From sequence record NC_071007.1: a stretch of 64,000 nt of DNA; one strand, 5' to 3'. The notes under the pieces are model-generated. The model searched no databases. It saw only the letters and a program-made list of their open reading frames with translations, and had not been told where the DNA came from. The translations under genes and the position numbers were made by a program. Of the stretch, positions 12,005 through 64,000 are shown piece by piece (position 1 is the first letter of the stretch; every line of letters begins with the position of its first letter).

Positions 12005-12773
12005 CGTTTTTACTTTCTTGTTTAGTCAGGTAATCAAGTCCACTGACCATTGTTTTAAAACTGGGGCGCTTTGGAGGTGTTGGTACAAATTGTTTTAACC
12101 CATACTGCTCCAAATATTCATCAGTTAACAATGCAGCTTTTCTAATTGTTTCTGGTGTATCGGAAGTATGTGCTAATTTCAATCCTTCCCTTGTTAAAAT
12201 AATCCAGTTCGATGGATTAATTTCTTTAAAGATAATCCCGTCAACAATTCCTTTTGTACCAAGCCAAATTGTTTCCATCCCAGTAAAGTAAATTGTTTTA
12301 CTATCAAACAACCTTGTTACTTCATTAATTGACATACCCGTTGTTTCAGCAATTTCTTTATGCGCTGTTTGGCTCTGGTTTACCAAAGTAGGGAGAGCAG
12401 AAAAAGCTTCTTCATGATCGATATCAGCTAAAGAGTAACTGGGTGAATGTTGAAACCAGACTGTATTAGCGTACGTCAAACGAAGGTATTTATCACTGGT
12501 AAATAAATACCAACCAGCACTTGCAATTCTTGACGTTGCAATAACAACAATATCTTGATGTCGTGATTCCAACATTTCTTTAATTACGAAACTTGTAGCT
12601 ACATCTCCGCCAGGTGTAGAAACATTTATTCTTATTGTATCTCTAGGATCAACTGCAATTTGAGGAAGGAAGTTAGTTGTAGCAAATTTTGCATTTAAAA
12701 TATCATGGATAAAAATGTTTCTGAGGTTTCCAGTTGAAACTTCTTGTTGGGTTTCTTTATTAGCTTTTGACAT
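12000..12773 (-). CDS. ClpP/crotonase-like protease
   Basis: RINVSTPGGDV, IASAG (catalytic Ser), FQHSP (His), GIVDGII. Confidence 0.75.
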   Translation of the reverse strand: MSKANKETQQEVSTGNLRNIFIHDILNAKFATTNFLPQIAVDPRDTIRINVSTPGGDVATSFVIKEMLESRHQDIVVIATSRIASAGWYLFTSDKYLRLTYANTVWFQHSPSYSLADIDHEEAFSALPTLVNQSQTAHKEIAETTGMSINEVTRLFDSKTIYFTGMETIWLGTKGIVDGIIFKEINPSNWIILTREGLKLAHTSDTPETIRKAALLTDEYLEQYGLKQFVPTPPKRPSFKTMVSGLDYLTKQESKNV

Positions 12774-13016
12774 TTAACGTTTCCTTTTCATTTCAATAAA
12801 AAGACAAAGAAGAAAAATTCCATATCCTAAATAAAATACTGGCCAACATGTTAACAACATAAATTGAATTAAAGACACCAATAATTTTTGTTTAAAAGTG
12901 TTTATGTAAGGGATACCAAAACACCACCAAAAATTACCTATTGTTATTAATCCAATGTACAAATAAATAACAAGAATAACTAAACATCCAAAAATCATTA
13001 ATAAAGAAGAAAGCAT
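12774..13016 (-). CDS. Small two-TM membrane protein
   Basis: Two long hydrophobic segments; first gene after promoter at 13044. Confidence 0.65.
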   Translation of the reverse strand: MLSSLLMIFGCLVILVIYLYIGLITIGNFWWCFGIPYINTFKQKLLVSLIQFMLLTCWPVFYLGYGIFLLCLFIEMKRKR

Positions 13017-32521: not shown

Positions 32522-35500
32522 ATGACAACTGAAAAGAAAACGTTTCCTAGGTGGGTTAGAGATCCTTTATTTTCACCTATTAAACAATTCTTAAATAAAC
32601 GTTTAAAGATTATTACAGAACAAGGCGATTTGGTTGAACAGTTATTGGCAAATGACCGTTACAAGCAAATGAAACCAGAGGACTTTGTTGCGGAAGATAT
32701 TTTTAATTCACTGGATGGAAAGAAACGTTTCTGTTTAGTGAGAAGAAATAAACAATTTGCCAGAGTTGATTTAGAATTAGAACATGTTAGATTAAAAGAT
32801 ATTTTTACTGATCAAGATATCTCTTTTATTAGTTTAACAAATCAAGCTGAATTTATTCGTCGCTTTAAACTAGGTGAAGTACAAGGTAAATTGTTGTACT
32901 TGGTTTGGAGAGATAGTTTTGCTGTTTGTTTTGAAAACAACAAAATAATGAACCTTACCGAAGTAGATAAACTATTTAATCATATCTACTTTGATGAACT
33001 TCATTTAGAGCGTGTAGATGAAACTACAATTGATCCTAATACATTAACCAGTGGGGTTGTTAGGATTAAAGACAGAAGTTGCTCAGATGAGCTTGTACAC
33101 GTTTTTGTTACAGAAAATATCGTTGAACAGCTTGCTTTAGACAGGATTGTAGATAACTATCCTCCAACTATGATTTTGAGGCGCGGGGATAGTTTTAGAC
33201 ACCTTACCAAAATTATGATTGGTGATGAGGATGTTACTGGTTTAGCTGAAATTTCTTATATAAGTAATAATGGTCGTATTAATGTTTCTCAGACTACAAA
33301 TAAACTTGAAACTATTTTCAAAGCAGTTAGAGGATCAAGTACCGAAGAGTTGCAGGAAACAGTAACCATTAATATTTCTGTCAACTTTATGGGGGAAGTG
33401 TTTAATAAACAATCTGTTATTGCCACCAGGATTGTCCCTGATGTTGTCAGTGAGCTGAAATTAGAAGGTTATCCCGTAGAAGTTACTGTTCCGACGGGTA
33501 GACAAATAGGTATTGTTGTAAAAGGTAAGTTTAACAATAATTTTGTTTCTTTTACACAAGCACCTAATTTACTGACTAGTTTAGTAACAGGAATGACATT
33601 AACCAACCAAGGTAATTATCGGGATGGGATTCTTTATTTGGGGACCTGTAATGTCGATATTACTTCTGGAGTAATAAACGATTTATTAAAGGGTAATTTT
33701 ATTTATACAATAGCTGGGGCGACACATACGGCCAGTTCCTTTGTAGAATTAAACATTACGCCTGTAAATCCTAATTTACCAGAATTAGTTAATACTAGTT
33801 TAACCCCAACTCTGTTACAAGGTAATAATAACAGTAATGGAAGTTTTACTTATGTTAACAAATTAAACAATGTCATCATCCCCAATACCAAATTAGATAT
33901 CCCAACCACTGACTTGGGAAGTAAACGGTTAATTCGTTTTACTGGATTTACAACTAACAAAGTAAACTATACATTGTTAAACCTTGCCGGTAATCCAGGA
34001 ACTGTGGAGAGCGAACAAGTTACCTTTACAACAAGATACATTGATCCAACTACTGGTTTAGTTTATACTAGACAGGATAAAGTTACTCCTAAAGTAATTA
34101 CTTTATCAGATTTAGCGTTGATCTCTTTATTTGACCAACCCATTTCGGTTAAAAAATATGAATCTGGATTAGTTCCTTTTAAAATGTTAATCAATGGTAA
34201 TGAAGATAAAACAAAAATTACTACTATTGAAATCATTGATAATAAAAATTATTTAGCCGGAACTATTTTTGGTAATAAACCAAAAGGTTCTTGGCAGGTA
34301 TTTGGAACTGGTCAAACTGAAGAAACTATTCCCGTTAGTTTTAAAGTTGGTTTTAACGTTGATGAAACAATTAGGTATGTAACAGGAATTCAAAATTTTA
34401 TTGTTTCACCATGGATCGGAAATTCAATTGGCGTTATTCCAAGTGAATTAAATATTTCTGGAAGAGCAGGGGAAAGTGGAGAGTTTACATTATCTTTCTT
34501 TGAGGATGTAACTTTTGCTAATACTCGTTTAAATTACATTCCTGATTTGAGTATTGTCCCAAGTCAATTAAATATTGTTGGTAAACTACAAAGTAATACT
34601 GAATGGATAAAAGGGAGCTATCAGCTATTTGGAGTAGGGAACCATTTAGGACATTTGACATATAGTTTAACCGATGGAACAAATCCTGATGATACTATCA
34701 AAGTGCCTTTAAAAGTTACAATATTACCTGGAGAAGAATTATTCTTTAATGTCACAGGGCTCACTGAAGCAAAACCGCTCCTTCCAGGAATAATCAATTG
34801 TGATATCCAATATAAAGGAATAAACATTCCATTAAACGACCCTAGAGTACGTTTAGAAGTAGAGTTAGGGGAAAGAGCTAAGACTGTATTCACAATTGGA
34901 CAAACAACGTCTGAAGGGATTACATTCAACAGCATTGTAGATGATATCCCAATGGGAGGAAATGTTATTTATGACATGACCTCTGAACTTAATTTTATTG
35001 ATGATTTAGGAGTTACACAAACTCGCAGTAAAGAAATTGCTGTTAAACTTTATCGAAATAATTTTACTTCTGTTATTGCTACATTAATAACGAATCCAGT
35101 AAAACCAATTATTTCTGATCAACCAATCGTCATTAATATTAAAGATCTCGATAATGATCCTCTTCCGGGAGCAATATTGGAAAGTGTTGTTATTGCAAAT
35201 GACAGCAATCACTTAGGTCCTATTCAGAGTTATCGAAATTCACTCGTTGAACGCAGAACTCAAAGTCTAGGTAATTATGAATTAAAGGCAACAACAAACC
35301 ATTTTGGTGGGAATCTAAATACCACATTAAAAATTATCATAGGCGGGTCTATAGTTGATGTTGTTATTCCCGATACAATAGTCGGAATTTCTCCAATTAA
35401 ATCTTTGGCTGGAAACACAGGCATCGCGGTTAACAATATTGGTAGTACAATTAACTTCACATTAAAACAAGATCGTTTAAATAATTTAAATGTCCCTGTC

Positions 35501-35719
35501 ATTGCAAAACGAATTGAAAATATTCGATATAGCAATGAGATGTTTAAAGAGCTAACTAATTTGGTTATGCTTGATAATAATGGAAATTACAAATTAGATC
35601 TTGTTTCTGCTGGAACAGTAGGTATTGGTGTTGTTGATTTTACACTAATCACTAATGAAACTAATAATGTTGAAGTTGCTTGGGAAATTCGTTTAGAAAT
35701 TAATATGGTTAGAGAATAA
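32522..35719 (+). CDS. Large virion fibre/structural protein: ~200-aa anchor plus tandem beta-rich (Ig-like) modules
   Basis: 1065 aa; T/V/I/N/G-rich repeats of about 100 aa; N-terminal domain paralogous to 21100-21690. Confidence 0.6.
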   Translation: MTTEKKTFPRWVRDPLFSPIKQFLNKRLKIITEQGDLVEQLLANDRYKQMKPEDFVAEDIFNSLDGKKRFCLVRRNKQFARVDLELEHVRLKDIFTDQDISFISLTNQAEFIRRFKLGEVQGKLLYLVWRDSFAVCFENNKIMNLTEVDKLFNHIYFDELHLERVDETTIDPNTLTSGVVRIKDRSCSDELVHVFVTENIVEQLALDRIVDNYPPTMILRRGDSFRHLTKIMIGDEDVTGLAEISYISNNGRINVSQTTNKLETIFKAVRGSSTEELQETVTINISVNFMGEVFNKQSVIATRIVPDVVSELKLEGYPVEVTVPTGRQIGIVVKGKFNNNFVSFTQAPNLLTSLVTGMTLTNQGNYRDGILYLGTCNVDITSGVINDLLKGNFIYTIAGATHTASSFVELNITPVNPNLPELVNTSLTPTLLQGNNNSNGSFTYVNKLNNVIIPNTKLDIPTTDLGSKRLIRFTGFTTNKVNYTLLNLAGNPGTVESEQVTFTTRYIDPTTGLVYTRQDKVTPKVITLSDLALISLFDQPISVKKYESGLVPFKMLINGNEDKTKITTIEIIDNKNYLAGTIFGNKPKGSWQVFGTGQTEETIPVSFKVGFNVDETIRYVTGIQNFIVSPWIGNSIGVIPSELNISGRAGESGEFTLSFFEDVTFANTRLNYIPDLSIVPSQLNIVGKLQSNTEWIKGSYQLFGVGNHLGHLTYSLTDGTNPDDTIKVPLKVTILPGEELFFNVTGLTEAKPLLPGIINCDIQYKGINIPLNDPRVRLEVELGERAKTVFTIGQTTSEGITFNSIVDDIPMGGNVIYDMTSELNFIDDLGVTQTRSKEIAVKLYRNNFTSVIATLITNPVKPIISDQPIVINIKDLDNDPLPGAILESVVIANDSNHLGPIQSYRNSLVERRTQSLGNYELKATTNHFGGNLNTTLKIIIGGSIVDVVIPDTIVGISPIKSLAGNTGIAVNNIGSTINFTLKQDRLNNLNVPVIAKRIENIRYSNEMFKELTNLVMLDNNGNYKLDLVSAGTVGIGVVDFTLITNETNNVEVAWEIRLEINMVRE

Positions 35720-35726: not shown

Positions 35727-35760
35727 TTACCTACCTAGCTCAAATGAGCTAGGTAGGTAA
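35727..35760. terminator. Bidirectional hairpin
   Basis: 16-bp arms TTACCTACCTAGCTCA/TGAGCTAGGTAGGTAA. Confidence 0.85.
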
Positions 35761-35774: not shown

Positions 35775-36029
35775 TTATTCTTCAAGACCTAAACGACTTG
35801 ATACTTCAGCCACTACAGTAACTTGGAGTGCTTTAGTGCCACCATTGGTTAAATTAATATTAATTGAAACTTTGTCTGATACTCCATTTGTAGGAGTGAT
35901 CGCATTGGGATCAATACCGTACGTTCCATATTTGGCACTAAAATCTAATGCGACAGTATTTCCAACGACACGATACATACCCGTTACTTTAAAACAAGAT
36001 GTATTGTTACTAGCAGGATCTCTTGTCAT
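35775..36029 (-). CDS. Small beta-rich protein downstream of tailspike 1
   Basis: 84-aa ORF between two hairpins; weak SD. Confidence 0.4.
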   Translation of the reverse strand: MTRDPASNNTSCFKVTGMYRVVGNTVALDFSAKYGTYGIDPNAITPTNGVSDKVSININLTNGGTKALQVTVVAEVSSRLGLEE

Positions 36030-36062
36030 TACCCAAAGTGAAACCCCTCTAATGATCTTTGA

Positions 36063-36093
36063 AACTTTAGGAACTCATTGAGTTCCTAAAGTT
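36063..36093 (-). terminator. Hairpin after tailspike 1
   Basis: 15-bp arms AACTTTAGGAACTCA/TGAGTTCCTAAAGTT. Confidence 0.8.
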
Positions 36094-36094
36094 T

Positions 36095-37951
36095 TTATTT
36101 AAATATAATTCCATCTGTTGTTACTGTGTTTATCGCGACGTTTAACTTGTCGCCGATCCCAGAATGGAATGATACAATTCCACCTGCCTTTACTTCTACA
36201 GAAAGGTACCCTGCACGATCACAGTTAGCGCCACGAGCAGATACTCGCCCGCCATCCCGACATGTTATTGCTCGATCTAAGGAGTCTGTTATAATTCCGT
36301 CGATAACATTAACAGTTCCGCCATCAATACAAGAAACTCCACGTTGTTTAGAACTTGAAAGATTCGCACCTCTGGCGTCTATAGAACCGGTATCTCTAGC
36401 TTCAACAGCTCTGTCACATCGCAGGGCCTGAATCCCGGTAGCGTCTATTCTTCCGCCACCAGCGACAAGTGCACCAAACCCGCAATCATTGATCTTAGCT
36501 TGTTTGCTTGCGCTCTGGGCGGCTATCGTAGCCACACCAATTGCGTACATACCTATCGGGTTAGTCGAGGCGTCAGCGCCATCTGCCTGAATATGCGCCG
36601 CACCCGATGCAAATATTCCTTTATCGGCGCAACCGTTAGCTATTCCAAGTTGGAAAGAAACACTAGAGCTATCACTCGCGATAACACCAGCTTGACCAGT
36701 GCACCCAGATACGTCAACTTCTGCACCTTCTATTTGGGAACAACCAGAAGCTATAATACCGTATTCGGAACACCCCCTTGCACTATCTTTAACCCACATT
36801 GCTGCTTCAGGTGTTTGTTTACTACGGGCATTAATTCTCCCACCATGGAGGGCGTGATAACCTCGCTTACTTCTGGCGGCGCAAGACTCTCGACAGTTTA
36901 CTATGGACCCGTCCCTAGAACAAAATGCCGTACCGGCGGCCCCTGAAGCATCAGACTGATAAAGATCAGCCATTGAATTCCAAATACAATAAACACCATA
37001 ATCGCCTAATGAATTTGCAAAATTACTTCTTGGAAATCCAACGACAGATCCATGGGCTACATGAAGCCCTCTATTTCTGGCATTAGAGAAATCAACCCCA
37101 GTTGTGTTTCCTGCCCCACCTCCACCGCCGCTTAAAACAAGCCCCCGCATATAGCAAAAACCCCAACCACCATAGAGAGCTTTAAATCCGTTCCTGGATT
37201 TTTGAACTCCAGAACCTGGATAAAGATAAACACCTGCGGCTTCAATAACAGCGACACCGTCTTTAGAGGTAGTATTGCTATCATAATAAAATAAGGCTTT
37301 TATGCTTGGTAAAACGGACTGATTACTTGCCCCAAAAATAGGGATTAAATCATCTTCATCGGATAATTTAGTGGTTATTTTTGTGTGATCAATCCTGACG
37401 GGAACATCACTTTCTATAATGATCCAGTTTAAATCGGAACCATTGATAACCAAGATTTGTTCCGCCATGACAAAACCAGATAAAAGTTTTATTTTACATT
37501 TGGCTTGGCCATTTTTAAATAACGGTCTCATTTTTACTAATTGATGGATGGCGGCTGTTATTGTTTTAAATTGAACAGCTGGACCAACTTCAATAGTAAA
37601 ACTTTCTTCTAAATCTAATACGGCTGCCGAAGAACTTAGTGCAGCCAATATTGTATTTTGAGGAGTGTCAAAATCAGTAGTGGATAAAAATGCCATTAAT
37701 CTTTGAGCAATGTTTTTTGTAATTCCACCAGGCGCTGGATTCTTATACCCAACTTTTGTTGCTCCAGTGGGGCCAGAAATATTATTAATTAATTCTGTAA
37801 CGTTCCTTTCCATATAGGAATAAGTAACGCGCTCTATTCCAAACCGATCTCGCCACATATCAGATGACGAGTTTAGTGCTTTGTCTAAATTACCAGCATT
37901 AAAAAATAAATCTGTCATGGCTGTGGAGCCAATAGGATTATTGCTTCCCAT
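36095..37951 (-). CDS. Tailspike 1, parallel beta-helix receptor-binding protein
   Basis: Shared NPIGS..DL..NAGNLD..DRFG anchor; Gly/Ala/Ser/Cys-rich beta-helix repeats; start MGSNN with GAGG SD. Confidence 0.8.
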   Translation of the reverse strand: MGSNNPIGSTAMTDLFFNAGNLDKALNSSSDMWRDRFGIERVTYSYMERNVTELINNISGPTGATKVGYKNPAPGGITKNIAQRLMAFLSTTDFDTPQNTILAALSSSAAVLDLEESFTIEVGPAVQFKTITAAIHQLVKMRPLFKNGQAKCKIKLLSGFVMAEQILVINGSDLNWIIIESDVPVRIDHTKITTKLSDEDDLIPIFGASNQSVLPSIKALFYYDSNTTSKDGVAVIEAAGVYLYPGSGVQKSRNGFKALYGGWGFCYMRGLVLSGGGGGAGNTTGVDFSNARNRGLHVAHGSVVGFPRSNFANSLGDYGVYCIWNSMADLYQSDASGAAGTAFCSRDGSIVNCRESCAARSKRGYHALHGGRINARSKQTPEAAMWVKDSARGCSEYGIIASGCSQIEGAEVDVSGCTGQAGVIASDSSSVSFQLGIANGCADKGIFASGAAHIQADGADASTNPIGMYAIGVATIAAQSASKQAKINDCGFGALVAGGGRIDATGIQALRCDRAVEARDTGSIDARGANLSSSKQRGVSCIDGGTVNVIDGIITDSLDRAITCRDGGRVSARGANCDRAGYLSVEVKAGGIVSFHSGIGDKLNVAINTVTTDGIIFK

Positions 37952-37998
37952 AACCAACCTCAAGTATTTTGTTTGTTAACAAATGATCTTAAAAAAAT

Positions 37999-38029
37999 AA
38001 CTTCTCCTAGGCATTATCTAGGAGAAGTT
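37999..38029 (-). terminator. Hairpin after tailspike 2
   Basis: 12-bp stem AACTTCTCCTAG/CTAGGAGAAGTT. Confidence 0.75.
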
Positions 38030-38036
38030 CTATACT

Positions 38037-40253
38037 TTATTCTAATTTATTTAATCTTTCTTCGATGTGCTTTAACTGAGTTTGAATTTCATCTATCTTT
38101 AACTCCAATCTAAGATTTGTTCTTCGTTGGGATGCATGAAGTAACCAATGACATTGATCGACTCTTAGCGAATAACGATCCCCTGCCGGTAAAACCAATA
38201 TCTTTTTACCAGTCGGAACTGTTTTTAAATCACCATCTTCTTGGATTACTGTAATGAACTCGTCCTCAAATACATCTTTCCATTTATCATAACAAAGTAA
38301 TCCAAACTCAGTGGCATCTTCACCGTGTTTGTTGAACGCTTCAACTATTTGTTGCGCAAACGCTCCTGCGTGCTTTCTAGCATTCTCTTCCCCCTTTTCT
38401 TTTATTGCCGACAGCCATTTAAATAAAATTATTTTAACATCATCAATAGCGTCTAAAACTGTTTCAGGGATTTCAAATGCTGAAGATTTTTCACGTTTAT
38501 CGGAAGTGGTGTTAACACCGTTAACACTAAAGATTTCTTTATTTCTAAAAGAAAAGCTACCGCAAGTAACATCGTTATCAACAAAGGGCCCGTAAGCTGT
38601 TGATGTAAAACGATACTTACTCACGTTTTCCAACCGATAAAAAATACTTCCTGCTTGGTGCCTGAGAATCGCTCTAGTAGGACTCACTTCATCCCCAAAT
38701 GCAATTCCAGAAAAGCTATTGCTTTTTGCACCAACGCCAAAATAATTGGCGCCTTCGCTGGCCCAATCTAAAACAAAATTCACACCAGCACCAGATGACC
38801 AATCAATAATAGATGGTAATCCATCAGCTGAAAATTGGTATGTTTTAAATGGTGCTGTAATGGCATTGTATCCAATTGCCCACCGACCACTAGTTCCAAA
38901 ATAAGGATAAAATTGAATGTTTCTAGTATCTCTATTTTGATCAGTTAAGTCAGTATTTAATCCCAAAAAGCCAAATAGTTTTCTTGCTTTTGAAACAGAG
39001 GGTTCATTAATAAAAGTCGGATTAGAGGTATTAATTGTACTTGAATCCCTAGATTCCCAAGCGACTCTTACAGTATCAAATGTATTATTATAGTTAGTGC
39101 TATGACTTTCATATTCGGATATTATTCCGTACTTGGTGTTAATAAAGTCAATATAATCACTATGTGAATATGAACTTCCTGTAACATCAACGCCAGTATC
39201 GGAATTTCGACATCTAACCCTAACTCCATTATAACCAATGTAAGCGGTTGAATTTCCGTAAACGCGAAGTGAAGTGGCATCAGCTTCATAATCACCGCCA
39301 GATACAACTAATCGACAACGAATGTTGGCATTAACACCATTTTGTTCACAATTTCTTGTCCAGACGTTATTAAGTCGGCCAGTGACACCGGCGTCCATCA
39401 CCAGTCCAGATGCTAACCCTGTCCCATTTCTTGCACCTTTTAATAAAATATTCGACATTAAAAAGCGCATTTCATTTCCAATCCAAATGGCGTAACCCTC
39501 GGTTCTTCCGGTTACATCTATTATGGTTGTCGGTTCTTGTGTTACTGGATCAACTGTTGAAGAACCTAAAATCTGGATTTGGTTTTTAGATCTTATTCCA
39601 GTTATAATTCCTTGTTCAGTAAACGTTCCTGAAGAAAGCTGTATTTTCCATGTTCCAAATAGTGTATTGCCAAAATTCTCTAAGATGTTAAAGGCATCTT
39701 GTATTGTTCTAATTGGATAGTTACTAGTTATACCGTCATTAATATCATACCCAGATGGTGAGACATGAATGGTATTATTTATTTTTGTCCCAGTAAATGT
39801 AAATGTGGTATCATCTCTTTTTAATACCCCCCGGCCGGTATGTACCACATCTTTAAAGTAAGGTATATTTTTAGTAGAAACATATGTTCCAACCGGCCAT
39901 AACAGTTCTTTACCCGTTTGTTTAGCAATTAAAACAGCCTTTTCAATACCGTCTTGATTACTAGTAATGCCGTCTATATTTGTTGTGATAAAATCACGAA
40001 CAGATAAAAATTCAGCGTTTTTATCCGCTTGTGTTCTCCCGTTCCCGATCCCTACTTTTGTTGCTCCATTTGGACCAGAAATGTTATTGATTAAATCAGT
40101 AACGTTTTTCTCCATGTAAGAATAGGTAATACGCTGTATTCCGAACCTATCCGTCCAGCTATTTTCTTCCGAATGCAATGCTCGATCTAAATTCCCTGCA
40201 TTAAGGAAAAGATCAGGGATCGTGGTCGATCCAATTGGATTTGTACTGCCCAT
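38037..40253 (-). CDS. Tailspike 2, beta-helix with C-terminal intramolecular chaperone (peptidase S74)
   Basis: Shared anchor; TSDKREK autocleavage Ser-Lys motif, HAGAFAQQI, GLLCYDKW, GDRYSLR. Confidence 0.85.
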   Translation of the reverse strand: MGSTNPIGSTTIPDLFLNAGNLDRALHSEENSWTDRFGIQRITYSYMEKNVTDLINNISGPNGATKVGIGNGRTQADKNAEFLSVRDFITTNIDGITSNQDGIEKAVLIAKQTGKELLWPVGTYVSTKNIPYFKDVVHTGRGVLKRDDTTFTFTGTKINNTIHVSPSGYDINDGITSNYPIRTIQDAFNILENFGNTLFGTWKIQLSSGTFTEQGIITGIRSKNQIQILGSSTVDPVTQEPTTIIDVTGRTEGYAIWIGNEMRFLMSNILLKGARNGTGLASGLVMDAGVTGRLNNVWTRNCEQNGVNANIRCRLVVSGGDYEADATSLRVYGNSTAYIGYNGVRVRCRNSDTGVDVTGSSYSHSDYIDFINTKYGIISEYESHSTNYNNTFDTVRVAWESRDSSTINTSNPTFINEPSVSKARKLFGFLGLNTDLTDQNRDTRNIQFYPYFGTSGRWAIGYNAITAPFKTYQFSADGLPSIIDWSSGAGVNFVLDWASEGANYFGVGAKSNSFSGIAFGDEVSPTRAILRHQAGSIFYRLENVSKYRFTSTAYGPFVDNDVTCGSFSFRNKEIFSVNGVNTTSDKREKSSAFEIPETVLDAIDDVKIILFKWLSAIKEKGEENARKHAGAFAQQIVEAFNKHGEDATEFGLLCYDKWKDVFEDEFITVIQEDGDLKTVPTGKKILVLPAGDRYSLRVDQCHWLLHASQRRTNLRLELKIDEIQTQLKHIEERLNKLE

Positions 40254-40266
40254 AAAAGGTCTCCTA

Positions 40267-40292
40267 AAGAGAAGAAATAAATTTCTTCTCTT
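40267..40292 (-). terminator. Hairpin upstream of tailspike 2
   Basis: 12-bp arms AAGAGAAGAAAT/ATTTCTTCTCTT. Confidence 0.65.
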
Positions 40293-40366
40293 TTCCCATT
40301 ATTAAAATCGTTTAGATTTTAATAAAATTATACTGTTAATTTAATAAAAGATTATTAAATGTTTAA

Positions 40367-40741
40367 TTAATTTCCCATTGTTACTTTACCGCAGCCTAAA
40401 AATGTAACAGTGATTTTGTTCTCTACTCCACTTCTATTTTCTATATAGAAAATATTTGCGTTTACACCACAGGTAGTTTTACCATCTGCACCAGTTGTTC
40501 CAGTTAATGCGGTATTTACTGCATCTAAAGCGGTTCCTGAAAAGTATTTTATCAATGCCGAACCACGACACCAAAGTAAACCATGTACTTGAGTTGAAAG
40601 GGATGAAATAAGCACATGACCTGCTGAAAGAGGCATTTCAATTTCACAAACTTCGTTATTAGGGATAGTGACAACGTAACTCCCAAATGTACTTGCAGTT
40701 TGATCTAATGCGCCAGAAAGAGCAGTTATACGAATAGCCAT
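40367..40741 (-). CDS. Tailspike accessory beta-sandwich protein
   Basis: Starts 1 nt after tailspike 3 stop; LTGTTGADGK...YIENR motif recalls C-terminal modules of capsule depolymerases. Confidence 0.6.
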   Translation of the reverse strand: MAIRITALSGALDQTASTFGSYVVTIPNNEVCEIEMPLSAGHVLISSLSTQVHGLLWCRGSALIKYFSGTALDAVNTALTGTTGADGKTTCGVNANIFYIENRSGVENKITVTFLGCGKVTMGN

Positions 40742-40742
40742 C

Positions 40743-42872
40743 TTATCCTCTCCTTAATATTTTATTACCAGTGTTTATGCTTCCTGGTTTTATTGATGTA
40801 TTAGGAGCAGCTACGGTAAACCCTTCAGGACCAACAATAATGTTATCACTACAAATATAAGTTGTTACCACACTTGTAATGTTTATTGCAGCTGGGGTTG
40901 CTGGATAACCAGTTCCTTCTTTAGCGATTATTTTATTTGAAACCACAATTGCTAGTCCAATGTGTTCTATGCGCAATAAAGGATATTTTTCCCAAAGCTT
41001 GTTATCAGAAACAATACTTTCGGCAGTCCCATAAATACTAATGGCACTAGAAAGTTCAGAGCTAGGCAAATACGATTTAAATACGGTCCCGGTAATTTCT
41101 ATTGTTCCGCCAGCGGCAGGGAAATTGAAAACAACAGAGCCTGAGCGCCAACCTTTATTACCGTCAACAATTATTAACCCACGATTAAAATTGTATTCGT
41201 TAATCCCAGCCGAAGCACTTGCTATTAATTGTAAACAATCATAGAAATGATTACCAGTAATTTCCAGATCGGACCAGTATTCAGATAGATAAACACCAAT
41301 CTTACAAAAATGTAATTTATTGTTTTTAGCAACAGAATTCCAGGTTCTTAAGTTCACGCCATAACGACAACCACTAATAACGTTATCGTGGACAAAAACG
41401 TACTCGGCATCAGTGTGAGTCGCAATCCCGGCATGAGCTCTGACATAACCTGTTGTATTAGTATCACCATAGTTAGTTTCAATAAAGTTATTATGAATAT
41501 CGATAAATCGACTAACACCATAAATAGCTGTATTTCTAGAGAGATGAGAACTAATAATACCGTGACGGCAATTGATAGTGTGATTATTAAAAATATTCAC
41601 AAACTGACTAGAGCTATAAACAATAGCGTAAGAAATAATATTGATATCACCTAATGGATTATGTTCAATGTTGTTACCGGAGATTTCTACATTATAGCAA
41701 GAAACAACTTCTAATGATCCTGTATCGACAAATTTAATTCGGTTATTGGTTAATTTAACGTTTTGTCCAAAAATAACCTTTAAACCTTGATCAGCATTCC
41801 CGTCCGGATTTCTGCCCTTACCTATAATACCAACGTTATTTATTGTGATATCTTTTATGGGGTTAATTTTTCGGATTCTTGCTGATTTAGAAACTTCCAA
41901 AGTTTCAAAAATAGGTGTACTTAACAATATGTTATTGGTAGTTGGGAAAACATTTGTTACTATAGCAAGTTGTCCCGCTGTGACTTGAACAGATGTATCA
42001 AACCACTTACCCCTATCATTAATTGAAAGTTCAATTAAATCACCAATTTTAAAATCATTAGCATTCGGGACATTGATTTTATTGTTTCCGGCAACCAAAT
42101 CACTTGTTGGGTAAATAAAATCACCAGTAGTCCCTCTATACGTTATGAGACCTACTTCCCGAGTGGTGTTATAGTTCGCCATTAAGGTAAAATCTAACCA
42201 AGAGTTTGATTCACCAAGTAAATTCACATTTGGTTGACCTACAATGACACCAGCCATCTTAAATGTATGACCAGCATCAAAGATTAATGTCCCGCCACCT
42301 AAGTTGGAAATTAAAAGCATTGCTGCATTTAATAATGCGGATTGATCAGTCCCATCATTTTTAATAAAATCAGAAGCATGGTATAACTTACCAACTTTAT
42401 TATTCAATGAATGTTTGATCCACCCATCTCGCATAAAAGAGATCAGTTTGGAACCGCCATCATCAGAGAACAAATTTTCTCTTAATGTTAATGTTTTACT
42501 TACCCAATCACTATTTGGGACTGAATTTTTGCTTACTGCTTTTGGATAATCGTTACCAACTAATCCAAATACCAACCCGGTGTTTTCTTGCAAAAGTACA
42601 TCAGCTGGTCCTGTGACTGTACCACCTGCTTCAAAACTACCATCTACTAAATTCAAACCAGCTTCAGCATAACTACGTTTTAATGCTTCTCTGGATAACT
42701 TAAAACTTTGTTGCATTTTTGCAACACGTTCCATTTTACCATAAGTCATTCGCTGGATATTAAATCGATCTATCCAGTAATCATCTTGACTATGTAAAGC
42801 TCTATCAAGGTTACCTGCATTAAAGAGCAGGTCAGCCATTGTACTAGAACCAATTGGGTTCTGACTACTCAT
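40743..42872 (-). CDS. Tailspike 3, pectate-lyase-like beta-helix depolymerase
   Basis: Shared anchor, then REALKRSYAEAGLNLVDGSFEAGG (Tail_spike_N/TSP1-Gp66-type domain), DGTDQSALLNAA and Asn-ladder repeats. Confidence 0.85.
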   Translation of the reverse strand: MSSQNPIGSSTMADLLFNAGNLDRALHSQDDYWIDRFNIQRMTYGKMERVAKMQQSFKLSREALKRSYAEAGLNLVDGSFEAGGTVTGPADVLLQENTGLVFGLVGNDYPKAVSKNSVPNSDWVSKTLTLRENLFSDDGGSKLISFMRDGWIKHSLNNKVGKLYHASDFIKNDGTDQSALLNAAMLLISNLGGGTLIFDAGHTFKMAGVIVGQPNVNLLGESNSWLDFTLMANYNTTREVGLITYRGTTGDFIYPTSDLVAGNNKINVPNANDFKIGDLIELSINDRGKWFDTSVQVTAGQLAIVTNVFPTTNNILLSTPIFETLEVSKSARIRKINPIKDITINNVGIIGKGRNPDGNADQGLKVIFGQNVKLTNNRIKFVDTGSLEVVSCYNVEISGNNIEHNPLGDINIISYAIVYSSSQFVNIFNNHTINCRHGIISSHLSRNTAIYGVSRFIDIHNNFIETNYGDTNTTGYVRAHAGIATHTDAEYVFVHDNVISGCRYGVNLRTWNSVAKNNKLHFCKIGVYLSEYWSDLEITGNHFYDCLQLIASASAGINEYNFNRGLIIVDGNKGWRSGSVVFNFPAAGGTIEITGTVFKSYLPSSELSSAISIYGTAESIVSDNKLWEKYPLLRIEHIGLAIVVSNKIIAKEGTGYPATPAAINITSVVTTYICSDNIIVGPEGFTVAAPNTSIKPGSINTGNKILRRG

Positions 42873-42889
42873 ATTTAACACCTCTAAAA

Positions 42890-42919
42890 AGTTAACATCT
42901 CCTAACAGAGATGTTAACT
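42890..42919 (-). terminator. Hairpin after tailspike 4
   Basis: 12-bp stem AGTTAACATCTC/GAGATGTTAACT. Confidence 0.75.
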
Positions 42920-42923
42920 AAAA

Positions 42924-44978
42924 TTATATTTTAAAAACAGTTAATGCTTTTAAAATAACTTCACCACCTAATAAATTTAATGTTTTATTAGAGTAGTAAC
43001 CGCCAACAATACCGCCCATATGAACAGGAAGTCCAGAGGGAGCAACTATTTCTGTAGTTTGTAAAAGCTTAGTATCTAATGGTTTAAAACCATCATAAAC
43101 TTTTACAACTTGTTTCCCGCCTCCGTAATTACCTAAAAGGAAACTACGTGATATTTCAATTCTCAATAAAATTGAACCATTTGACTGTGTTGGTGTAAAT
43201 GCTACGTTAATAGGTGTTGAAAGTACTTCGTTTGCAATTAAACCGTATTTGGCATTTGCAATTCGATAGCGAGTATCGTCATGTCGATAAAGAACAGTGG
43301 ATTGAATACTACCGTACCCATCTTGTTTATCATTTCCTAATCCGAAGAATGTACTTGAACCAAGCAAAGAAATTCCGGTTCCAACAGCCATTTCTGCTTC
43401 AACCAAAAACACAAGTTTTTCTTCACTCATCACACCAAACGTTCGGTCAAATCCTTCGGTCGTAATAATATCTGCTAAAGGTAAAAAACTATGTATTCTA
43501 GGACCATTTAAACAAGGTGGTGTTGGTGGTTTAAAATCAAAGAACCCGTAAAAGAACAGACTCTTACTTCCCCTGACATAGTGACCGAGATCTCCACATA
43601 AATATTGGATTTTATTTAATCCATATTTAAGTTTACCAACAGTATATGGGATGTCGGAGGGTTTTAATACCCCACTGTATCTAAATCCAACAGTAGGGGG
43701 GATTTTAGTTACAGTTTCGTTATTGACAAAACTTTTTATTGCAACAGCCGGAGGTAATGGATTATTAATTGGGGTATCTGGTATATCCGTTCCCCATCCT
43801 TCTCCAATTAAACCGTTATAGATAACTTCGCAATCAGGGATTTCCGACCACACCCAAATTGTTGACATAGGCGCCCGTGGACCAGATGGCTGATGGGTAA
43901 GATTGGGATCTTTATAATCAACTCTAAAGGTAAATCCTTGTTTGCTATTACTAGAACTATCGCCAGATAAAGTTAATAAGAAATTACCAAAACTATTACT
44001 TCTGGAATCATTAGAAGTAATACTTTCTGGTTTACCTGTTATAATAACAGTATTTTTAAAGAAAGTTTTAGCTAGAATTTGAGCTTTAATACGATGACCA
44101 ATATCTTTAAAATGTAACCCTACGTCGTCGCCAGTACTGAAGTCCCCGTCAGAATCGACATCGGTTGATTGTTCTAAGAACCAACGATAACCATTGCCAT
44201 TATTGTTAGCCCAATCTCTAAGTTGCTCGCCCTTATTAATAATGGGGATATTTCTTAACTTAGCAACATCGTACTTTACCATGTCGATCTGTTTTGTTAT
44301 CTCTCCGTTAAATACCGCATTTGGAACATTATAATTACGAAGAACTGGGTCACATGTTAAAATAACAGGAAGTACTCCATAAGAAACAATTTTATCAATT
44401 AATAAAAAGAGTTGTTCTTTAAATGGTACTATTTGAGAACCTTCCGGTCTTGCGTCATTTAAACCAAAATCAATAAAAACAACGTCCGGTTTACCGTAAA
44501 AGGGATTATCAATAATTGCTTTATCAAAGTTCGCAAGCGCCCAACCGTCAACCAAAGATTTTCCTGAATACCCTGCGTTGTACATAAAAATGTTATTATT
44601 GTTGAACATTTCACGCAATAGGGTTTCTAAAATAACAGGATAAGAATTTGGTGCATTTAAATTATGATTACTGTTTCCAACCGCATTACCACCAGAAGTA
44701 GGGTTACCGATCCAATCAGTTGTCCCAAATCCATCTACAGTACTGTCTCCGTAAAAGGCAAATTTGACAGTTTCTCCAGCATCCATTTTTGCAGATAAAT
44801 ATTCTAGGGATCCTTTTGGTAAAGCTTTTTTCTCCATCCCATGTAAAGTCGGTCGGGTTACACCGAATCGATCCACATAAGTATCGTCTTCACCATTTAT
44901 TGCATAATCTAAATTGGTCGCATTTAAATAGGCGTCACGGAAGTCCGGACTCCCTATGGGATTACCTGTTGATGACAT
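42924..44978 (-). CDS. Tailspike 4 with SGNH/GDSL esterase domain
   Basis: Shared anchor; FYGDSTVDG (block I Ser), NAGYSG (II), DFGLND (III), DDVGLHF (V His). Confidence 0.8.
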   Translation of the reverse strand: MSSTGNPIGSPDFRDAYLNATNLDYAINGEDDTYVDRFGVTRPTLHGMEKKALPKGSLEYLSAKMDAGETVKFAFYGDSTVDGFGTTDWIGNPTSGGNAVGNSNHNLNAPNSYPVILETLLREMFNNNNIFMYNAGYSGKSLVDGWALANFDKAIIDNPFYGKPDVVFIDFGLNDARPEGSQIVPFKEQLFLLIDKIVSYGVLPVILTCDPVLRNYNVPNAVFNGEITKQIDMVKYDVAKLRNIPIINKGEQLRDWANNNGNGYRWFLEQSTDVDSDGDFSTGDDVGLHFKDIGHRIKAQILAKTFFKNTVIITGKPESITSNDSRSNSFGNFLLTLSGDSSSNSKQGFTFRVDYKDPNLTHQPSGPRAPMSTIWVWSEIPDCEVIYNGLIGEGWGTDIPDTPINNPLPPAVAIKSFVNNETVTKIPPTVGFRYSGVLKPSDIPYTVGKLKYGLNKIQYLCGDLGHYVRGSKSLFFYGFFDFKPPTPPCLNGPRIHSFLPLADIITTEGFDRTFGVMSEEKLVFLVEAEMAVGTGISLLGSSTFFGLGNDKQDGYGSIQSTVLYRHDDTRYRIANAKYGLIANEVLSTPINVAFTPTQSNGSILLRIEISRSFLLGNYGGGKQVVKVYDGFKPLDTKLLQTTEIVAPSGLPVHMGGIVGGYYSNKTLNLLGGEVILKALTVFKI

Positions 44979-45065
44979 GTCCATCTCCTAAAATTATAAA
45001 TATTTTACCAACTCCACATAGGATCGACAGTAATATTTTATGGTATTTCCTAAGAGAAAATTCAA

Positions 45066-45416
45066 ATGGACCAATTTCAATTTAAAAATCCAAAGTTAGA
45101 ATTTATTGTCGAGACAGGTAAATTTAGATTACTGGAAGATTATGTTACTCCAGAGTGTACAGTTCCCAAAGGTTTTGTTACCAATGGTGCATCTTCGGGT
45201 AGAATATTACAAACTTTATTTCCTTCTTATTATACTTATTTTCCTGCCGCTCTTGTTCACGACTATATGTATGCAACAGGCATTGTTCCTAAAGAAGAAG
45301 CAGACCGATTATTTAGATACAATATTGAAGTTCGTTTAAAAATGTCGGCTAGATATTATATTCCGATGTATTATGCTGTTCGGTGGTTTGGTGGTTCACA
45401 TTACAAACAAAAATAA
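45066..45416 (+). CDS. DUF1353-like protein
   Basis: TVPKGFVTNGAS..AALVHDYMY..EEADRLF..AVRWFG. Confidence 0.75.
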   Translation: MDQFQFKNPKLEFIVETGKFRLLEDYVTPECTVPKGFVTNGASSGRILQTLFPSYYTYFPAALVHDYMYATGIVPKEEADRLFRYNIEVRLKMSARYYIPMYYAVRWFGGSHYKQK

Positions 45417-45619
45417 AACTAATTACCGAAACCTTAAAGACAGTGATGATAGTAAACTAAAATGCACTGTCGAAAAAATTAGGGTATTCTGTAATAAGAT
45501 AGTAATTCCATCAAACAAACTAACTGAGTTAATTAAACATTGTGACAACAAAATTATTAAAATTAGCCAAGTTATGGTGTCAGTAAAAGATTTAACTGCT
45601 TAAATAAATAAAAAAAGAT

Positions 45620-60288: not shown

Positions 60289-61230
60289 ATGAATGTACTT
60301 GAGTGCTACGGTGTTGGAACCGTAATGCAGGATAAAGATAATGACAGTGACGAAGTCTTTGTCCATTGCCCTGGAATTTTTAGTGGTGCGGATGGTGAAG
60401 CACTTGCCACCGTAGAAGAAAAGAAAACTGACATCAAAACACCCACAGGAGATTCAACTTCTAGTTTTGGTTTAAGTAGCAACGGAATTCCCTGTAAATG
60501 GATGGCTTTTAATACTAACCGTGTCACTCCCCCAAACGTTAGAAAAGGGAGTAAGGTAGTTGTTTATAAGTTTTCAGGTTCAAATCAATACCGTTGGATG
60601 TATTTTGGATTAGATGGAACAATGCGTTTGGAAACGGTTGTTTATGCTTGGTCAGCTTCTCCAAAGGTTAATGAGAACTCTCCTTTAACTCCTGAAAACT
60701 ATTATATCTTAATGATTTCAACGCATACTGGTAAGATCCAATTACTGACCGGTCAAGGTAATGGAGAGAAAGCTGCCTATGCATTTACAATTGACACGGC
60801 TAACGCTATTTTTTCTTTAACAGACAGTGAAGAAAATTTAATGGCTTTAAATTCCGTAGAACACACTTGGAGTTTTAGCAATCAAGAAAAAAGTGTTATT
60901 GCGATTGATAAAAAGAAAATATTAATTAGTTGTGAAGAACAGCTTGCAGTTAAAGGAAAAGAAAACATTACGATTCAAACTAAGACATTGGATGTTAATG
61001 TTGGACAAACTTTTAACTTGAATGTGGGTGAAGTAACAACTATGAGATCTCCTACATTTAATTTCACTGGCGATATGAATCATACAGGAAATACAAAACA
61101 AACCGGTGAATTTAAAGCAACAGGCGTGATTGAATCCGATACTGATTGTATATCGGCCGGTAAGTCTGGTAAAAGTCATAAACACACTGGCGTTGAAAGA
61201 GGTAATGGAGAAACTGATCCAGTATCTTAA
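60289..61230 (+). CDS. Baseplate central spike (gpV/gp138-like; phiKZ gp164-like position next to SbcC)
   Basis: OB-like N-terminus, short beta-repeat C-terminus, SHKHTG HxH apex metal motif. Confidence 0.75.
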   Translation: MNVLECYGVGTVMQDKDNDSDEVFVHCPGIFSGADGEALATVEEKKTDIKTPTGDSTSSFGLSSNGIPCKWMAFNTNRVTPPNVRKGSKVVVYKFSGSNQYRWMYFGLDGTMRLETVVYAWSASPKVNENSPLTPENYYILMISTHTGKIQLLTGQGNGEKAAYAFTIDTANAIFSLTDSEENLMALNSVEHTWSFSNQEKSVIAIDKKKILISCEEQLAVKGKENITIQTKTLDVNVGQTFNLNVGEVTTMRSPTFNFTGDMNHTGNTKQTGEFKATGVIESDTDCISAGKSGKSHKHTGVERGNGETDPVS

Positions 61231-63998: not shown

Positions 63999-64000
63999 TA

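What the first reader, a model, noticed from the sequence alone, without database searches (positions are those of the whole stretch)
36095..44978. Four-tailspike cassette array: one shared anchor, four different receptor-attack bodies
Seen: four tandem genes each begin with the same ~50-aa module (NPIGS-x4-D-x3-NA-x-NLD-x-A...DRF-x3-R-x-T). Their bodies differ: beta-helix (TSP1), beta-helix plus S74 chaperone (TSP2), Tail_spike_N plus pectate-lyase-like helix with a coupled accessory gene (TSP3), and SGNH esterase (TSP4). Each gene has its own SD and is bounded by a hairpin. Known: multi-tailspike systems occur in CBA120 and phiK64-1, usually with hierarchical branching adaptors. Inference: a phiKZ-like jumbo phage has built a plug-and-play multi-serotype adsorption apparatus in which equivalent anchors compete for or share one docking site, with no visible branching domains.
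Basis: partly seen in the sequence, partly recalled or inferred. Interest (0 to 1): 0.8.

Follow-up and report, generated by a model that had tools for sequence, protein, structure and literature searches.

The report
Tailspike gene array sharing one anchor
Four neighbouring tailspike genes of the jumbo Aeromonas phage ZPAH34 (a fifth lies elsewhere in the genome) share a short N-terminal attachment module but carry different sugar-attacking bodies; the arrangement is real, but it was already noted in print and is common in related phages.

Summary
The window is Aeromonas phage ZPAH34 (Chaoshanvirus, Chimalliviridae). Four minus-strand genes (36095-44978) open with the same ~55-aa module and carry different bodies. 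Each has its own Shine-Dalgarno site and a downstream hairpin.

It is not new. The 2023 AerS_266 paper (PMC10673249) reported the shared N-termini of AerS_266 and ZPAH34 receptor-binding proteins and proposed that they attach the proteins to conserved tail proteins. The module is widespread: 2017 representative proteins and 77-223 phage records. It is homologous to residues 4-59 of the Shigella siphophage Sf11 tailspike gp13 (PDB 9OCC). There, the three N-terminal helices of a trimer bundle with one adaptor helix of a tail protein.

Corrections to the finding:
- ZPAH34 has five such spikes, not four.
- Similar sets occur in AerS_266, CF8, two metagenomic relatives and two Miami-like jumbo phage genomes.
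- The anchors are not equivalent. They fall into at least three classes that mostly follow gene position across phages.
- ZPAH34 also keeps a phiKZ-type gp131-like fibre set.

Body exchange is directly visible. An 84-codon leftover of a displaced spike lies downstream of the last gene. The same body sits on a different anchor class in a relative. The docking partner remains unidentified.

The parts
42924..44978 (-). Spike 4 (ZPAH34 gp133), first gene transcribed. Class II anchor (44808-44978), then an SGNH glycan acetylesterase domain (about residues 70-310), then a beta-sandwich C-terminal half.
   Evidence: Pfam GDSL above cut-off. PDB 4QNL phage tail fibre protein, E 3e-8. S79/G136/N174/H289 invariant. 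AF2 pLDDT 87.7. Foldseek to the Moo19 gp82 and B2 gp48 phage appendages and to carbohydrate esterases. Anchor is 76% identical to AerS_266 gp6.
40743..42872 (-). Spike 3 (gp134). Class I anchor (42705-42872), a second N-terminal module (about residues 60-145, a divergent Tail_spike_N by transitive homology), then a right-handed beta-helix body.
   Evidence: Beta_helix and NosD above cut-off. Residues 4-124 match Sf11 gp13 residues 4-109, E 5.5e-9. 51% identity over 148 aa to CF8_0009, which carries Pfam Tail_spike_N. The body is distantly like Bacillus phage pre-neck appendage proteins.
40367..40741 (-). gp135, a 124-aa accessory gene translationally coupled to spike 3. It is an orphan; its only weak likeness is to the C-terminus of a tailspike family.
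   Evidence: Coupling seen in sequence. phrog_14558 positions 672-738 of 740, E 1.7e-5. No tblastn match in 50,697 phage records. No similar-length homologue in 5.8 billion proteins.
38037..40253 (-). Spike 2 (gp136). Class I anchor (40086-40253), a short shared linker, a pectate-lyase-like body and a C-terminal S74 intramolecular chaperone domain (about residues 584-644) with a terminal coiled segment.
   Evidence: Peptidase_S74 at 37.1 bits. PDB 9VVR, 3GUD, 3GW6 and 4UW8 match the C-terminal 180 aa. PHROG tailspike families. The body is 27% identical over 333 aa to gp227.
36095..37951 (-). Spike 1 (gp137). Class I anchor (37784-37951), a disordered linker (residues 59-79), then a Gly/Ala/Cys-rich beta-helix body.
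   Evidence: AF2 model pLDDT 90.6 with anchor H12-27, a hairpin and H44-58. Foldseek 8EGR, E 5e-14; the anchor part matches 9OCC chains I and J, TM 0.70. The body is 85% identical to P0152, which sits at the gp227-type locus of a relative.
35775..36029 (-). orf84: the leftover last 84 codons of a displaced AerS_266-gp1-like spike (a recombination scar; possibly still translated).
   Evidence: 85.7% aa identity to residues 507-590 of AerS_266 gp1 and 83% nt identity. 84.5% identity to the C-terminus of the last spike in the metagenomic relative L018. phrog_20231 C-terminus, E 6e-19.
42890..42919 (-). 13-bp hairpin followed by U5, between spike 4 and spike 3.
   Evidence: -17.1 kcal/mol, z -5.2.
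40266..40293 (-). 12-bp hairpin just upstream of the spike 2 ribosome-binding site, preceded by two AU-rich hairpins.
   Evidence: z -4.4 for the whole gap; sequence.
37999..38029 (-). 12-bp hairpin followed by U7, between spike 2 and spike 1.
   Evidence: Terminator scan and fold. The homologous gap is conserved in AerS_266.
36062..36094 (-). 15-bp hairpin directly after the spike 1 stop codon.
   Evidence: -22 kcal/mol, z -4.3.
35727..35760 (.). 15-bp bidirectional hairpin closing the array, between orf84 and the convergent 1065-aa gene.
   Evidence: z -7.8. Conserved in AerS_266.
45066..45416 (+). DUF1353 gene (gp132), divergently transcribed. It is a conserved neighbour of the class II spike in the relatives examined where the neighbour could be checked. 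Candidate assembly chaperone or adaptor.
   Evidence: Pfam DUF1353, E 2e-15, and phrog_1158 'tail assembly chaperone'. 87% nt identity to AerS_266 together with the spike 4 anchor. Present beside the SGNH spike in L018 and L019.

Best explanation
The region encodes four of the five receptor-attacking tailspikes of the chimallivirus ZPAH34.

Each spike is a presumed trimer (inferred). Its first ~55 residues form a helix / beta-hairpin / helix anchor homologous to residues 4-59 of Sf11 tailspike gp13. By analogy with the solved Sf11 tail, the three anchors of a trimer wrap one exposed helix of a conserved tail or baseplate protein to form a helical bundle (inferred). The variable body then acts on surface polysaccharide: an acetylesterase, or one of three different beta-helix enzymes, one of which is matured by an S74 chaperone.

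The anchors are not interchangeable copies. They form at least three old classes (slots 1-3; slot 4; the distant fifth gene). Orthologues of each class are kept between phage species while the bodies are replaced. The most likely reading is therefore several distinct docking sites occupied at once, giving a virion that carries several enzymes together (inferred).

Bodies are exchanged by recombination between related phages. The conserved anchor and upstream gap serve as the 5' homology. The 3' end or hairpin-containing gap serves as the 3' homology. This is shown by the sequence footprints.

The docking partner is not identified. Candidates are the phiKZ-type peripheral baseplate and fibre proteins, which ZPAH34 retains.
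For: - Anchor shared.
- Anchor profile hits only Sf11 gp13 in the PDB, E 1.5e-10. The modelled anchor superposes on 9OCC chains I and J at TM 0.70 and 38-40% identity.
- The Sf11 paper shows three gp13 N-terminal helices bundling with one helix of tail protein gp17.
- Anchor classes cluster by gene position across ZPAH34, AerS_266, CF8, PS1 and ACP1. Orthologue identities are 76% for slot 4 and 94.7% for the fifth gene, against 37-54% between classes.
- The same pattern holds between KPN8 and BUCTxx100.
- The residue aligned to Sf11 Lys19, which makes three salt bridges to the adaptor helix, is Phe or Leu in class I, Tyr in class II and Gln in class III.
- Between ZPAH34 and AerS_266, only the anchors, gaps and flanks are conserved at the DNA level. 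No body of ZPAH34 has a homologue in AerS_266 or CF8.
- The orf84 scar.
- The spike 1 body sits on a class III anchor at the fifth-gene locus in a relative.
- The SGNH body occurs in other phages behind other N-terminal modules: Tail_spike_N, tail-collar, P22 head-binding and T7 tail-fibre N.
- Anchor-bearing proteins carry at least 10 kinds of body domain.
- ZPAH34 has homologues of phiKZ gp26, gp27, gp130, gp131 (four paralogues), gp139, gp157 and gp164.
Against: - No homologue of the Sf11 adaptor protein gp17 exists in ZPAH34. The partner, and even the bundle geometry in a contractile-tail baseplate, are inferred.
- No virion proteomics exist for ZPAH34 or AerS_266 in the papers read, so co-display of all five spikes is unproven.
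- The link between class and gene position is not strict. CF8 has no class III anchor, and its gene at the fifth locus carries a class I-like anchor.
- Clustering by position could reflect vertical inheritance of the 5' ends without any difference in docking.
- Trimer formation is assumed from fold families, not tested.
Confidence: 0.65

Rival explanations
1. All anchors are functionally equivalent and compete for, or randomly share, one kind of docking site. Individual virions would then be stochastic mosaics of the spikes.
For: - The same body works behind class I and class III anchors.
- CF8 places a class I-like anchor at the locus that holds class III in ZPAH34 and AerS_266, and lacks class III altogether.
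- The three class I anchors are 57-71% identical to each other and could plausibly share a site.
Against: - Anchor orthologues are kept distinct across species, with no sign of homogenisation. Only one pair shows a DNA-level repeat: 206 nt at 73% identity.
- The classes differ at positions that contact the adaptor helix in Sf11.
- Paralogous anchors in KPN8 and BUCTxx100 are likewise 37-83% identical, with the same variants recurring in both genomes.
Confidence: 0.2
2. Hierarchical branching. Only some spikes touch the baseplate. The others dock on helices carried by the long gp131-like fibre proteins (gp108-gp110, 1212-1309 aa) or on another spike, giving a branched fibre as in Ackermannviridae or Alcyoneusvirus.
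For: - ZPAH34 keeps four gp131-like paralogues beside a gp130-like platform. Three of them are much longer than phiKZ gp131.
- Spikes 3 and 5 carry an extra Tail_spike_N-like module that the others lack, so the N-terminal architectures are not uniform.
Against: - No XD or gp10-like domain is detectable.
- No solved relative exists for gp108 or gp109.
- Nothing ties a specific helix to an anchor.
- This model partly overlaps with the best explanation rather than excluding it.
Confidence: 0.25
3. Part of the array is evolutionary debris. One or more of the spike genes are unexpressed leftovers of past exchanges, like orf84.
For: The locus does hold debris. orf84 is one case. A 76-aa ORF at 45373-45603 also matches only the 3' end of a 314-aa AerS_266 gene.
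Against: All four large genes are intact full-length ORFs with ribosome-binding sites. The catalytic residues of the SGNH domain are conserved. The two spikes modelled give high-confidence full-length folds.
Confidence: 0.07

Closest known systems
Shared N-termini of AerS_266 and ZPAH34 receptor-binding proteins (Microorganisms 2023, PMC10673249)
   Same: This is the same phage clade and partly the same ZPAH34 proteins. The paper reports a short similar 5' fragment in several tailspike genes and proposes that it attaches the spikes to conserved tail proteins.
   Different: The paper found the fragment in gp1, gp2 and gp5 only. It did not count five anchors per genome, did not link the module to a solved structure, did not separate anchor classes, and did not note the exchange scars. 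Here AerS_266 gp6 and a fifth gene also carry the anchor.
Shigella siphophage Sf11 tailspike gp13 docked on distal tail protein gp17 (PDB 9OCC; J Virol 2025, PMC12724387)
   Same: The anchor is homologous (E 1.5e-10; TM 0.70). Spike 3 also shares the following Tail_spike_N-like stretch. Sf11 provides the only solved docking mode: three anchor helices plus one adaptor helix.
   Different: Sf11 is a 46-kb non-contractile-tail phage with a single spike type. ZPAH34 has no gp17 homologue. The salt-bridge residues Arg16 and Lys19 of gp13 are not conserved in class I anchors.
Ackermannviridae CBA120 TSP1-4 and phage G7C gp63.1/gp66
   Same: Several tandem tailspike genes with different enzymatic bodies. 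A Tail_spike_N domain family is present. G7C has an SGNH esterase spike (PDB 4QNL hit).
   Different: Those systems assemble through XD or gp10-like branching domains on particular spikes (from my own knowledge of that literature, not checked here). None is detectable in ZPAH34, where every spike carries the same kind of short anchor.
phiKZ gp131/gp133/gp134/gp135 fibre paralogues (Nat Commun 2026, PMC13250141)
   Same: Same virus family. Paralogous host-recognition proteins share an N-terminal attachment domain and differ at the C-terminus. Attachment involves a helical bundle.
   Different: The module is unrelated: the anchor HMM gives no signal on gp131-135. ZPAH34 has its own gp131-like set (gp107-gp110) in addition to the spikes.
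Goslar DUF7941 module proteins (Sci Adv 2026, PMC13742148)
   Same: A chimallivirus-wide theme: one N-terminal module fused to various carbohydrate-binding or hydrolase domains.
   Different: DUF7941 is a globular domain plus a linker, reported as exclusive to chimalliviruses. It forms head-to-tail filaments. The ZPAH34 anchor is also common in small siphophages.

Membership tests
Sf11 gp13-type N-terminal tailspike anchor | Sequence homology to gp13 residues about 4-59 | tested here: met
   Profile of the four anchors against the PDB gives one hit only, 9occ_G residues 6-60, E 1.5e-10. Single-protein hits.
Sf11 gp13-type N-terminal tailspike anchor | Located at the extreme N-terminus of a tailspike-like protein | tested here: met
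   All five ZPAH34 copies start within residues 1-8. Nearly all of the 150 best representative hits listed match at about residues 1-60.
Sf11 gp13-type N-terminal tailspike anchor | Helical fold of the anchor | tested here: met
   AF2 models give helix 12-27, a hairpin and helix 44-58 at pLDDT 77-88. Foldseek to 9OCC chains I and J gives TM 0.70-0.71. These are monomer predictions only.
Sf11 gp13-type N-terminal tailspike anchor | Three anchors of a trimer bundle with one adaptor helix of a tail protein | not testable with these tools
   No complex prediction tool and no virion structure were available.
Sf11 gp13-type N-terminal tailspike anchor | Partner is a gp17-like distal tail protein | tested here: not met
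   phmmer of Sf11 gp17, and of its helix region, against all ZPAH34 ORFs found nothing below E 0.3.
Ackermannviridae-type branched tailspike complex | XD or T4 gp10-like branching domains on at least one spike | tested here: not met
   No such Pfam or PHROG match in any of the four proteins.
Ackermannviridae-type branched tailspike complex | Tail_spike_N domain | tested here: inconclusive
   No direct Pfam hit in spike 3 or gp227. Their homologues CF8_0009, P0153 and Sf11 gp13 do carry it.
phiKZ gp131-type fibre paralogues | gp131-like N-terminal domain | tested here: not met
   phiKZ gp131-135 match ZPAH34 gp107-gp110, not the spikes. The anchor HMM scores E > 0.8 on phiKZ proteins.
SGNH glycan O-acetylesterase tailspikes (spike 4) | SGNH domain with conserved Ser, Gly, Asn and His | tested here: met
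   Pfam Lipase_GDSL_2 above cut-off. S79, G136, N174 and H289 are invariant in 46 sequences. Fold matches carbohydrate esterases.
SGNH glycan O-acetylesterase tailspikes (spike 4) | Deacetylation of host O-antigen or capsule | not testable with these tools
   Requires biochemical work.
S74 intramolecular-chaperone tailspikes (spike 2) | C-terminal Peptidase_S74 domain | tested here: met
   37.1 bits against a cut-off of 22. PDB 3GUD, 3GW6 and 9VVR. Self-cleavage was not tested.
Goslar DUF7941 module | N-terminal DUF7941 domain | tested here: inconclusive
   No Pfam hit, but I could not confirm that this Pfam copy holds DUF7941. The anchor's presence in siphophages argues against membership.

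The most novel reading that the evidence does not exclude
Chimalliviruses of several genera have taken a docking module otherwise typical of small siphophages (a three-helix clamp on one adaptor helix) and diversified it into several orthogonal anchor/dock pairs. One contractile-tail baseplate, or its gp131-like fibres, could then display five to seven different glycan-attacking spikes at fixed positions. This would be a branching architecture with no gp10/XD domains and a still-unknown adaptor.
Probability: 0.3. Interest if true: 0.6.

Novelty: already known. Interest (0 to 1): 0.3.

Why it matters
Multi-spike jumbo phages are candidates for treating Aeromonas disease in aquaculture, and host range is set by these spikes. 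Two points help in reading host range from sequence. First, the anchor is a widespread module with a solved structure. Second, the bodies turn over between close relatives. The open question is where five anchors dock on a phiKZ-type baseplate, whose periphery is still largely unmodelled even in phiKZ and Goslar. That is a modest structural gap, not a new kind of system.

Tried and rejected
- **Docking partner by homology.** Sf11 gp17, whole and helix region alone, against all ZPAH34 ORFs gave nothing.
- **PDB sequence searches of gp108 and gp109.** No hits.
- **The convergent 1065-aa neighbour as an adaptor.** It has no significant Pfam or PHROG family and reads by eye as beta-rich rather than helical. 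Not pursued further.
- **GC rise over spike 1 (0.42-0.52 against 0.35) as a sign of recent foreign origin.** Rejected. GC3 is only 0.29 against 0.24-0.26 in the other spikes, so the rise comes from Gly/Ala/Arg-rich composition.
- **gp135 as a widespread accessory family.** Rejected. It has no homologue in phage records or in 5.8 billion proteins of similar length. Only a weak PHROG C-terminal match exists.
- **Shared repeat element in the intergenic hairpins.** They are four unrelated sequences.
- **Sigma-70 promoter scan.** Not above the shuffled expectation, and not relevant to a phage with its own RNA polymerases.
- **Fourth anchor site in CF8.** tblastn counts four places; I mapped only three.
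- Consensus lines printed by the alignment tools were not used.

Full report
**Identity of the window.** Megablast places the region at 100% identity in Aeromonas phage ZPAH34 (OM810292.1 / NC_071007.1, 234,546 bp). Window position equals record position minus 62,000. The genus Chaoshanvirus is filed under Chimalliviridae in the current NCBI taxonomy. The genome carries split RNA polymerase subunits, PhuZ, and homologues of the phiKZ portal and major capsid protein. 'phiKZ-like jumbo phage' is therefore correct.

**The observation.** Five minus-strand ORFs fill 36095-44984. The four large ones align over their first ~56 residues with 20 invariant columns and 43-71% identity. Pairwise BLASTP E-values run from 1e-8 to 2e-30 and are confined to the N-termini.

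- Spike 4 is an SGNH esterase. The Pfam score is above the cut-off, the catalytic Ser/Gly/Asn/His are invariant, and the fold matches phage appendages and carbohydrate esterases.
- Spike 3 is a NosD/pectate-lyase-like beta-helix.
- Spike 2 carries an S74 chaperone.
- Spike 1 is a beta-helix most like the receptor-binding protein of phage Andhra.
- Caveat: Tail_spike_N is not detected directly in spike 3. Its residues 60-145 are 51% identical to CF8_0009 and match Sf11 gp13, and both of those carry that Pfam domain.

The 124-aa gene is translationally coupled to spike 3. Every downstream gap holds a perfect 12-15 bp hairpin, with z from -3.6 to -7.8. AGGAG-like sites precede the RefSeq starts at 44978, 42872, 40253 and 37951.

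**What the anchor is.** A profile of the four anchors finds 2017 representative proteins at E <= 0.001 among 1.84 billion. In the 150 best hits listed, the match is almost always at residues ~5-55, and most of those proteins are 500-900 aa long. tblastn finds it in 77 phage records with a class I query and 223 with a class III query. Most of these are ~45-55 kb phages of Salmonella, Pseudomonas, Klebsiella, Escherichia and Shigella.

Seventy such proteins were scanned with Pfam. They carry pectate-lyase-like, beta-helix, GDSL, S74, Tail_spike_N, SASA, CBM5/12, GDPD and deacetylase domains. No Pfam family covers the anchor itself.

Against the PDB, the profile hits one sequence only: Sf11 tailspike gp13, residues 6-60, E 1.5e-10. 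The AF2 models of spikes 1 and 4 give a helix, beta-hairpin, helix anchor. It superposes on 9OCC chains I and J at TM 0.70.

In the Sf11 cryo-EM structure, residues 4-59 of the three gp13 chains form a helical bundle with one adaptor helix of distal tail protein gp17. Salt bridges from gp13 Arg16 and Lys19 stabilise it. This is the only experimentally seen docking mode for the module, and it is the basis of my mechanism.

**Prior description.** The AerS_266 paper (PMC10673249, 2023) reports three things:
- Its tailspike genes share a short 5' fragment.
- That fragment resembles the N-termini of ZPAH34 receptor-binding proteins.
- Such N-termini probably attach the proteins to conserved tail proteins.

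The core of the finding is therefore published. The ZPAH34 paper itself does not discuss the phage's own spikes and has no virion proteomics.

**How common the array is.** An HMM of the anchor run on six-frame ORFs gives these counts:

| Phage or contig | Anchor-bearing genes |
|---|---|
| ZPAH34 | 5: the four in the array plus gp227 at record 10823-12997 |
| AerS_266 | 4 in the array (including gp6, which the paper excluded) plus 1 at the gp227-type locus |
| CF8 | 2 at the syntenic locus plus 1 at the gp227-type locus (tblastn counts 4 places) |
| PS1, ACP1 | 1 mapped at the gp227-type locus (tblastn counts 3-4 places) |
| Metagenomic relative L018 | 4 |
| Metagenomic relative L019 | 2 |
| Klebsiella phage KPN8 | at least 4 |
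| BUCTxx100 | 7, six of them tandem |

In ZPAH34, gp227 lies next to a DarB-like gene, the homologues of phiKZ gp26 and gp27, and the sheath and tube genes.

**Cassette exchange is visible.** Between ZPAH34 and AerS_266 (71.7% genome similarity), blastn conserves only the anchors, the intergenic gaps and the flanks, at 71-87% identity. No ZPAH34 body has a BLASTP match in AerS_266 or CF8. Two footprints stand out:
- **orf84 (35775-36029).** It is 85.7% identical to the last 84 residues of AerS_266 gp1. It is 84.5% identical to the end of the last spike in L018. ZPAH34 therefore once held a gp1-like spike in that slot, and its 3' end was left behind when the present spike 1 arrived.
- **The spike 1 body.** It recurs at 85% identity in protein P0152. 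P0152 is encoded at the gp227-type locus of a metagenomic relative, behind a class III anchor plus Tail_spike_N-like module.

The SGNH body also occurs elsewhere behind Tail_spike_N, tail-collar, P22 head-binding and T7 tail-fibre N-terminal modules. 'Plug-and-play' is therefore a fair description, and it is the familiar modular evolution of tailspikes.

**Are the anchors equivalent?** A neighbour-joining tree of 16 anchors groups them by gene position, not by phage:
- Class III: ZPAH34 gp227 and its AerS_266 orthologue (94.7% identical), with PS1 and ACP1.
- Class II: spike 4, AerS_266 gp6 and CF8_0159 (68-76% identical).
- Class I: slots 1-3, with spike 2 pairing with gp2 and spike 3 with gp5.

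Identity between classes within ZPAH34 is 37-54%. The residue aligned to Sf11 Lys19 is Phe or Leu in class I, Tyr in class II and Gln in class III. The residue aligned to Arg16 is Thr, Pro or Ala in class I and Arg in classes II and III.

KPN8 and BUCTxx100 show the same pattern. Paralogues are 37-83% identical, while the same variants recur in both genomes. At the DNA level only spikes 1 and 2 share a detectable repeat, 206 nt at 73%, so there is no sign of homogenisation.

I read this as several long-maintained anchor specificities, which means several docking sites. The counter-evidence is real:
- CF8 lacks class III and puts a class I-like anchor at that locus.
- The same body works behind two classes.
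- Position-wise clustering could arise from vertical inheritance alone.

**Where they might dock.** ZPAH34 has no gp17 homologue. It does retain the phiKZ peripheral baseplate and fibre system:

| ZPAH34 | phiKZ homologue |
|---|---|
| gp225 | gp26 |
| gp224 | gp27 |
| gp106 | gp130 |
| gp107, gp108, gp110 | gp131 N-terminal domain (gp109 matches gp132, E 2e-5, and shares its first ~400 aa with gp108) |
| gp101 | gp139 |
| gp186 (window 4402-5736) | gp157 |
| gp111 (window 60289-61230) | spike gp164 |

In phiKZ, twelve fibres built from gp131 paralogues dock beneath gp130 through a helical bundle. Much of the periphery is still unmodelled in both phiKZ and Goslar. The spike anchors are unrelated to the gp131 N-terminal domain. 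The spikes are therefore an additional host-recognition layer. Their dock is most likely one of these conserved peripheral proteins or the long fibre paralogues. This step is inference only.

**Verdict.** It is wrong on the count. It is probably wrong on the equivalence of the anchors. It is wrong on novelty.
- the homology to the solved Sf11 anchor;
- the fifth spike;
- the anchor classes;
- the exchange scars;
- the coexistence with a gp131-type fibre set.

Noticed in passing
window 35775-36029 (-): An 84-codon ORF, annotated as a hypothetical protein, is the orphaned C-terminal end of a displaced AerS_266-gp1-like tailspike (85.7% aa identity). It keeps an ATG and sits between two strong hairpins. 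Whether it is still made is unknown.
   Followed up: yes
window 45373-45603 (+): A 76-aa ORF overlaps the end of the DUF1353 gene. Its 3' 132 nt match, at 79% identity, only the 3' end of a 314-aa AerS_266 gene (record 4578-5522) that lies inside the AerS_266 spike array. It is probably another rearrangement scar.
   Followed up: partly
window 40367-40741 (-): The coupled accessory gene gp135 has no homologue in 50,697 phage records or among similar-length proteins of a 5.8-billion-protein collection. Its only likeness is a weak match to the C-terminus of a PHROG tailspike family. It may be a split-off C-terminal domain of the spike 3 cassette.
   Followed up: partly
window 32522-35719 (+): A convergent 1065-aa protein that looks beta-rich and has no significant Pfam or PHROG family closes the array. 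A gene of about 1070 aa occupies the same position in CF8 (CF8_0161, blastn match) and in L019. It is a fixed boundary of the variable locus, and its function is unknown.
   Followed up: partly
ZPAH34 record 10823-12997 (outside the window; L005): This is the fifth anchor-bearing spike, gp227. It has a class III anchor, a Tail_spike_N-like module and a pectate-lyase-like body distantly related to that of spike 2. It lies next to the homologues of phiKZ gp26 and gp27 and the sheath gene.
   Followed up: yes
window 61281-64000 (-) and record 127267-136911 (L007): ZPAH34 encodes four paralogues with a phiKZ gp131-like N-terminal domain (gp107-gp110, one of them a 1309-aa leucine-rich-repeat protein partly in the window) beside a gp130 homologue. 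This is a second, phiKZ-type fibre system that coexists with the spikes.
   Followed up: partly
window 60289-61230 (+) and 4402-5736 (+): The gene annotated 'baseplate assembly protein' (gp111) is the homologue of the phiKZ central spike gp164 (E 3e-24). gp186 is the homologue of the phiKZ outer-baseplate protein gp157 (E 3e-30).
   Followed up: partly
L013 20500-22398 (-) and L014 14226-16619 (+): Klebsiella phage KPN8 and the phage recorded as Stenotrophomonas phage BUCTxx100 share an identical first 60 residues in one spike, but the ORFs differ in length (633 and 798 aa). Either this is another case of one anchor with different bodies, or the two records are much closer relatives than their host labels suggest.
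   Followed up: no
window 36100-37300: A local GC rise to 0.44-0.52 inside spike 1 against a 0.35 background comes from Gly/Ala/Arg/Cys-rich beta-helix repeats (GC3 only 0.29), not from foreign codon usage.
   Followed up: yes
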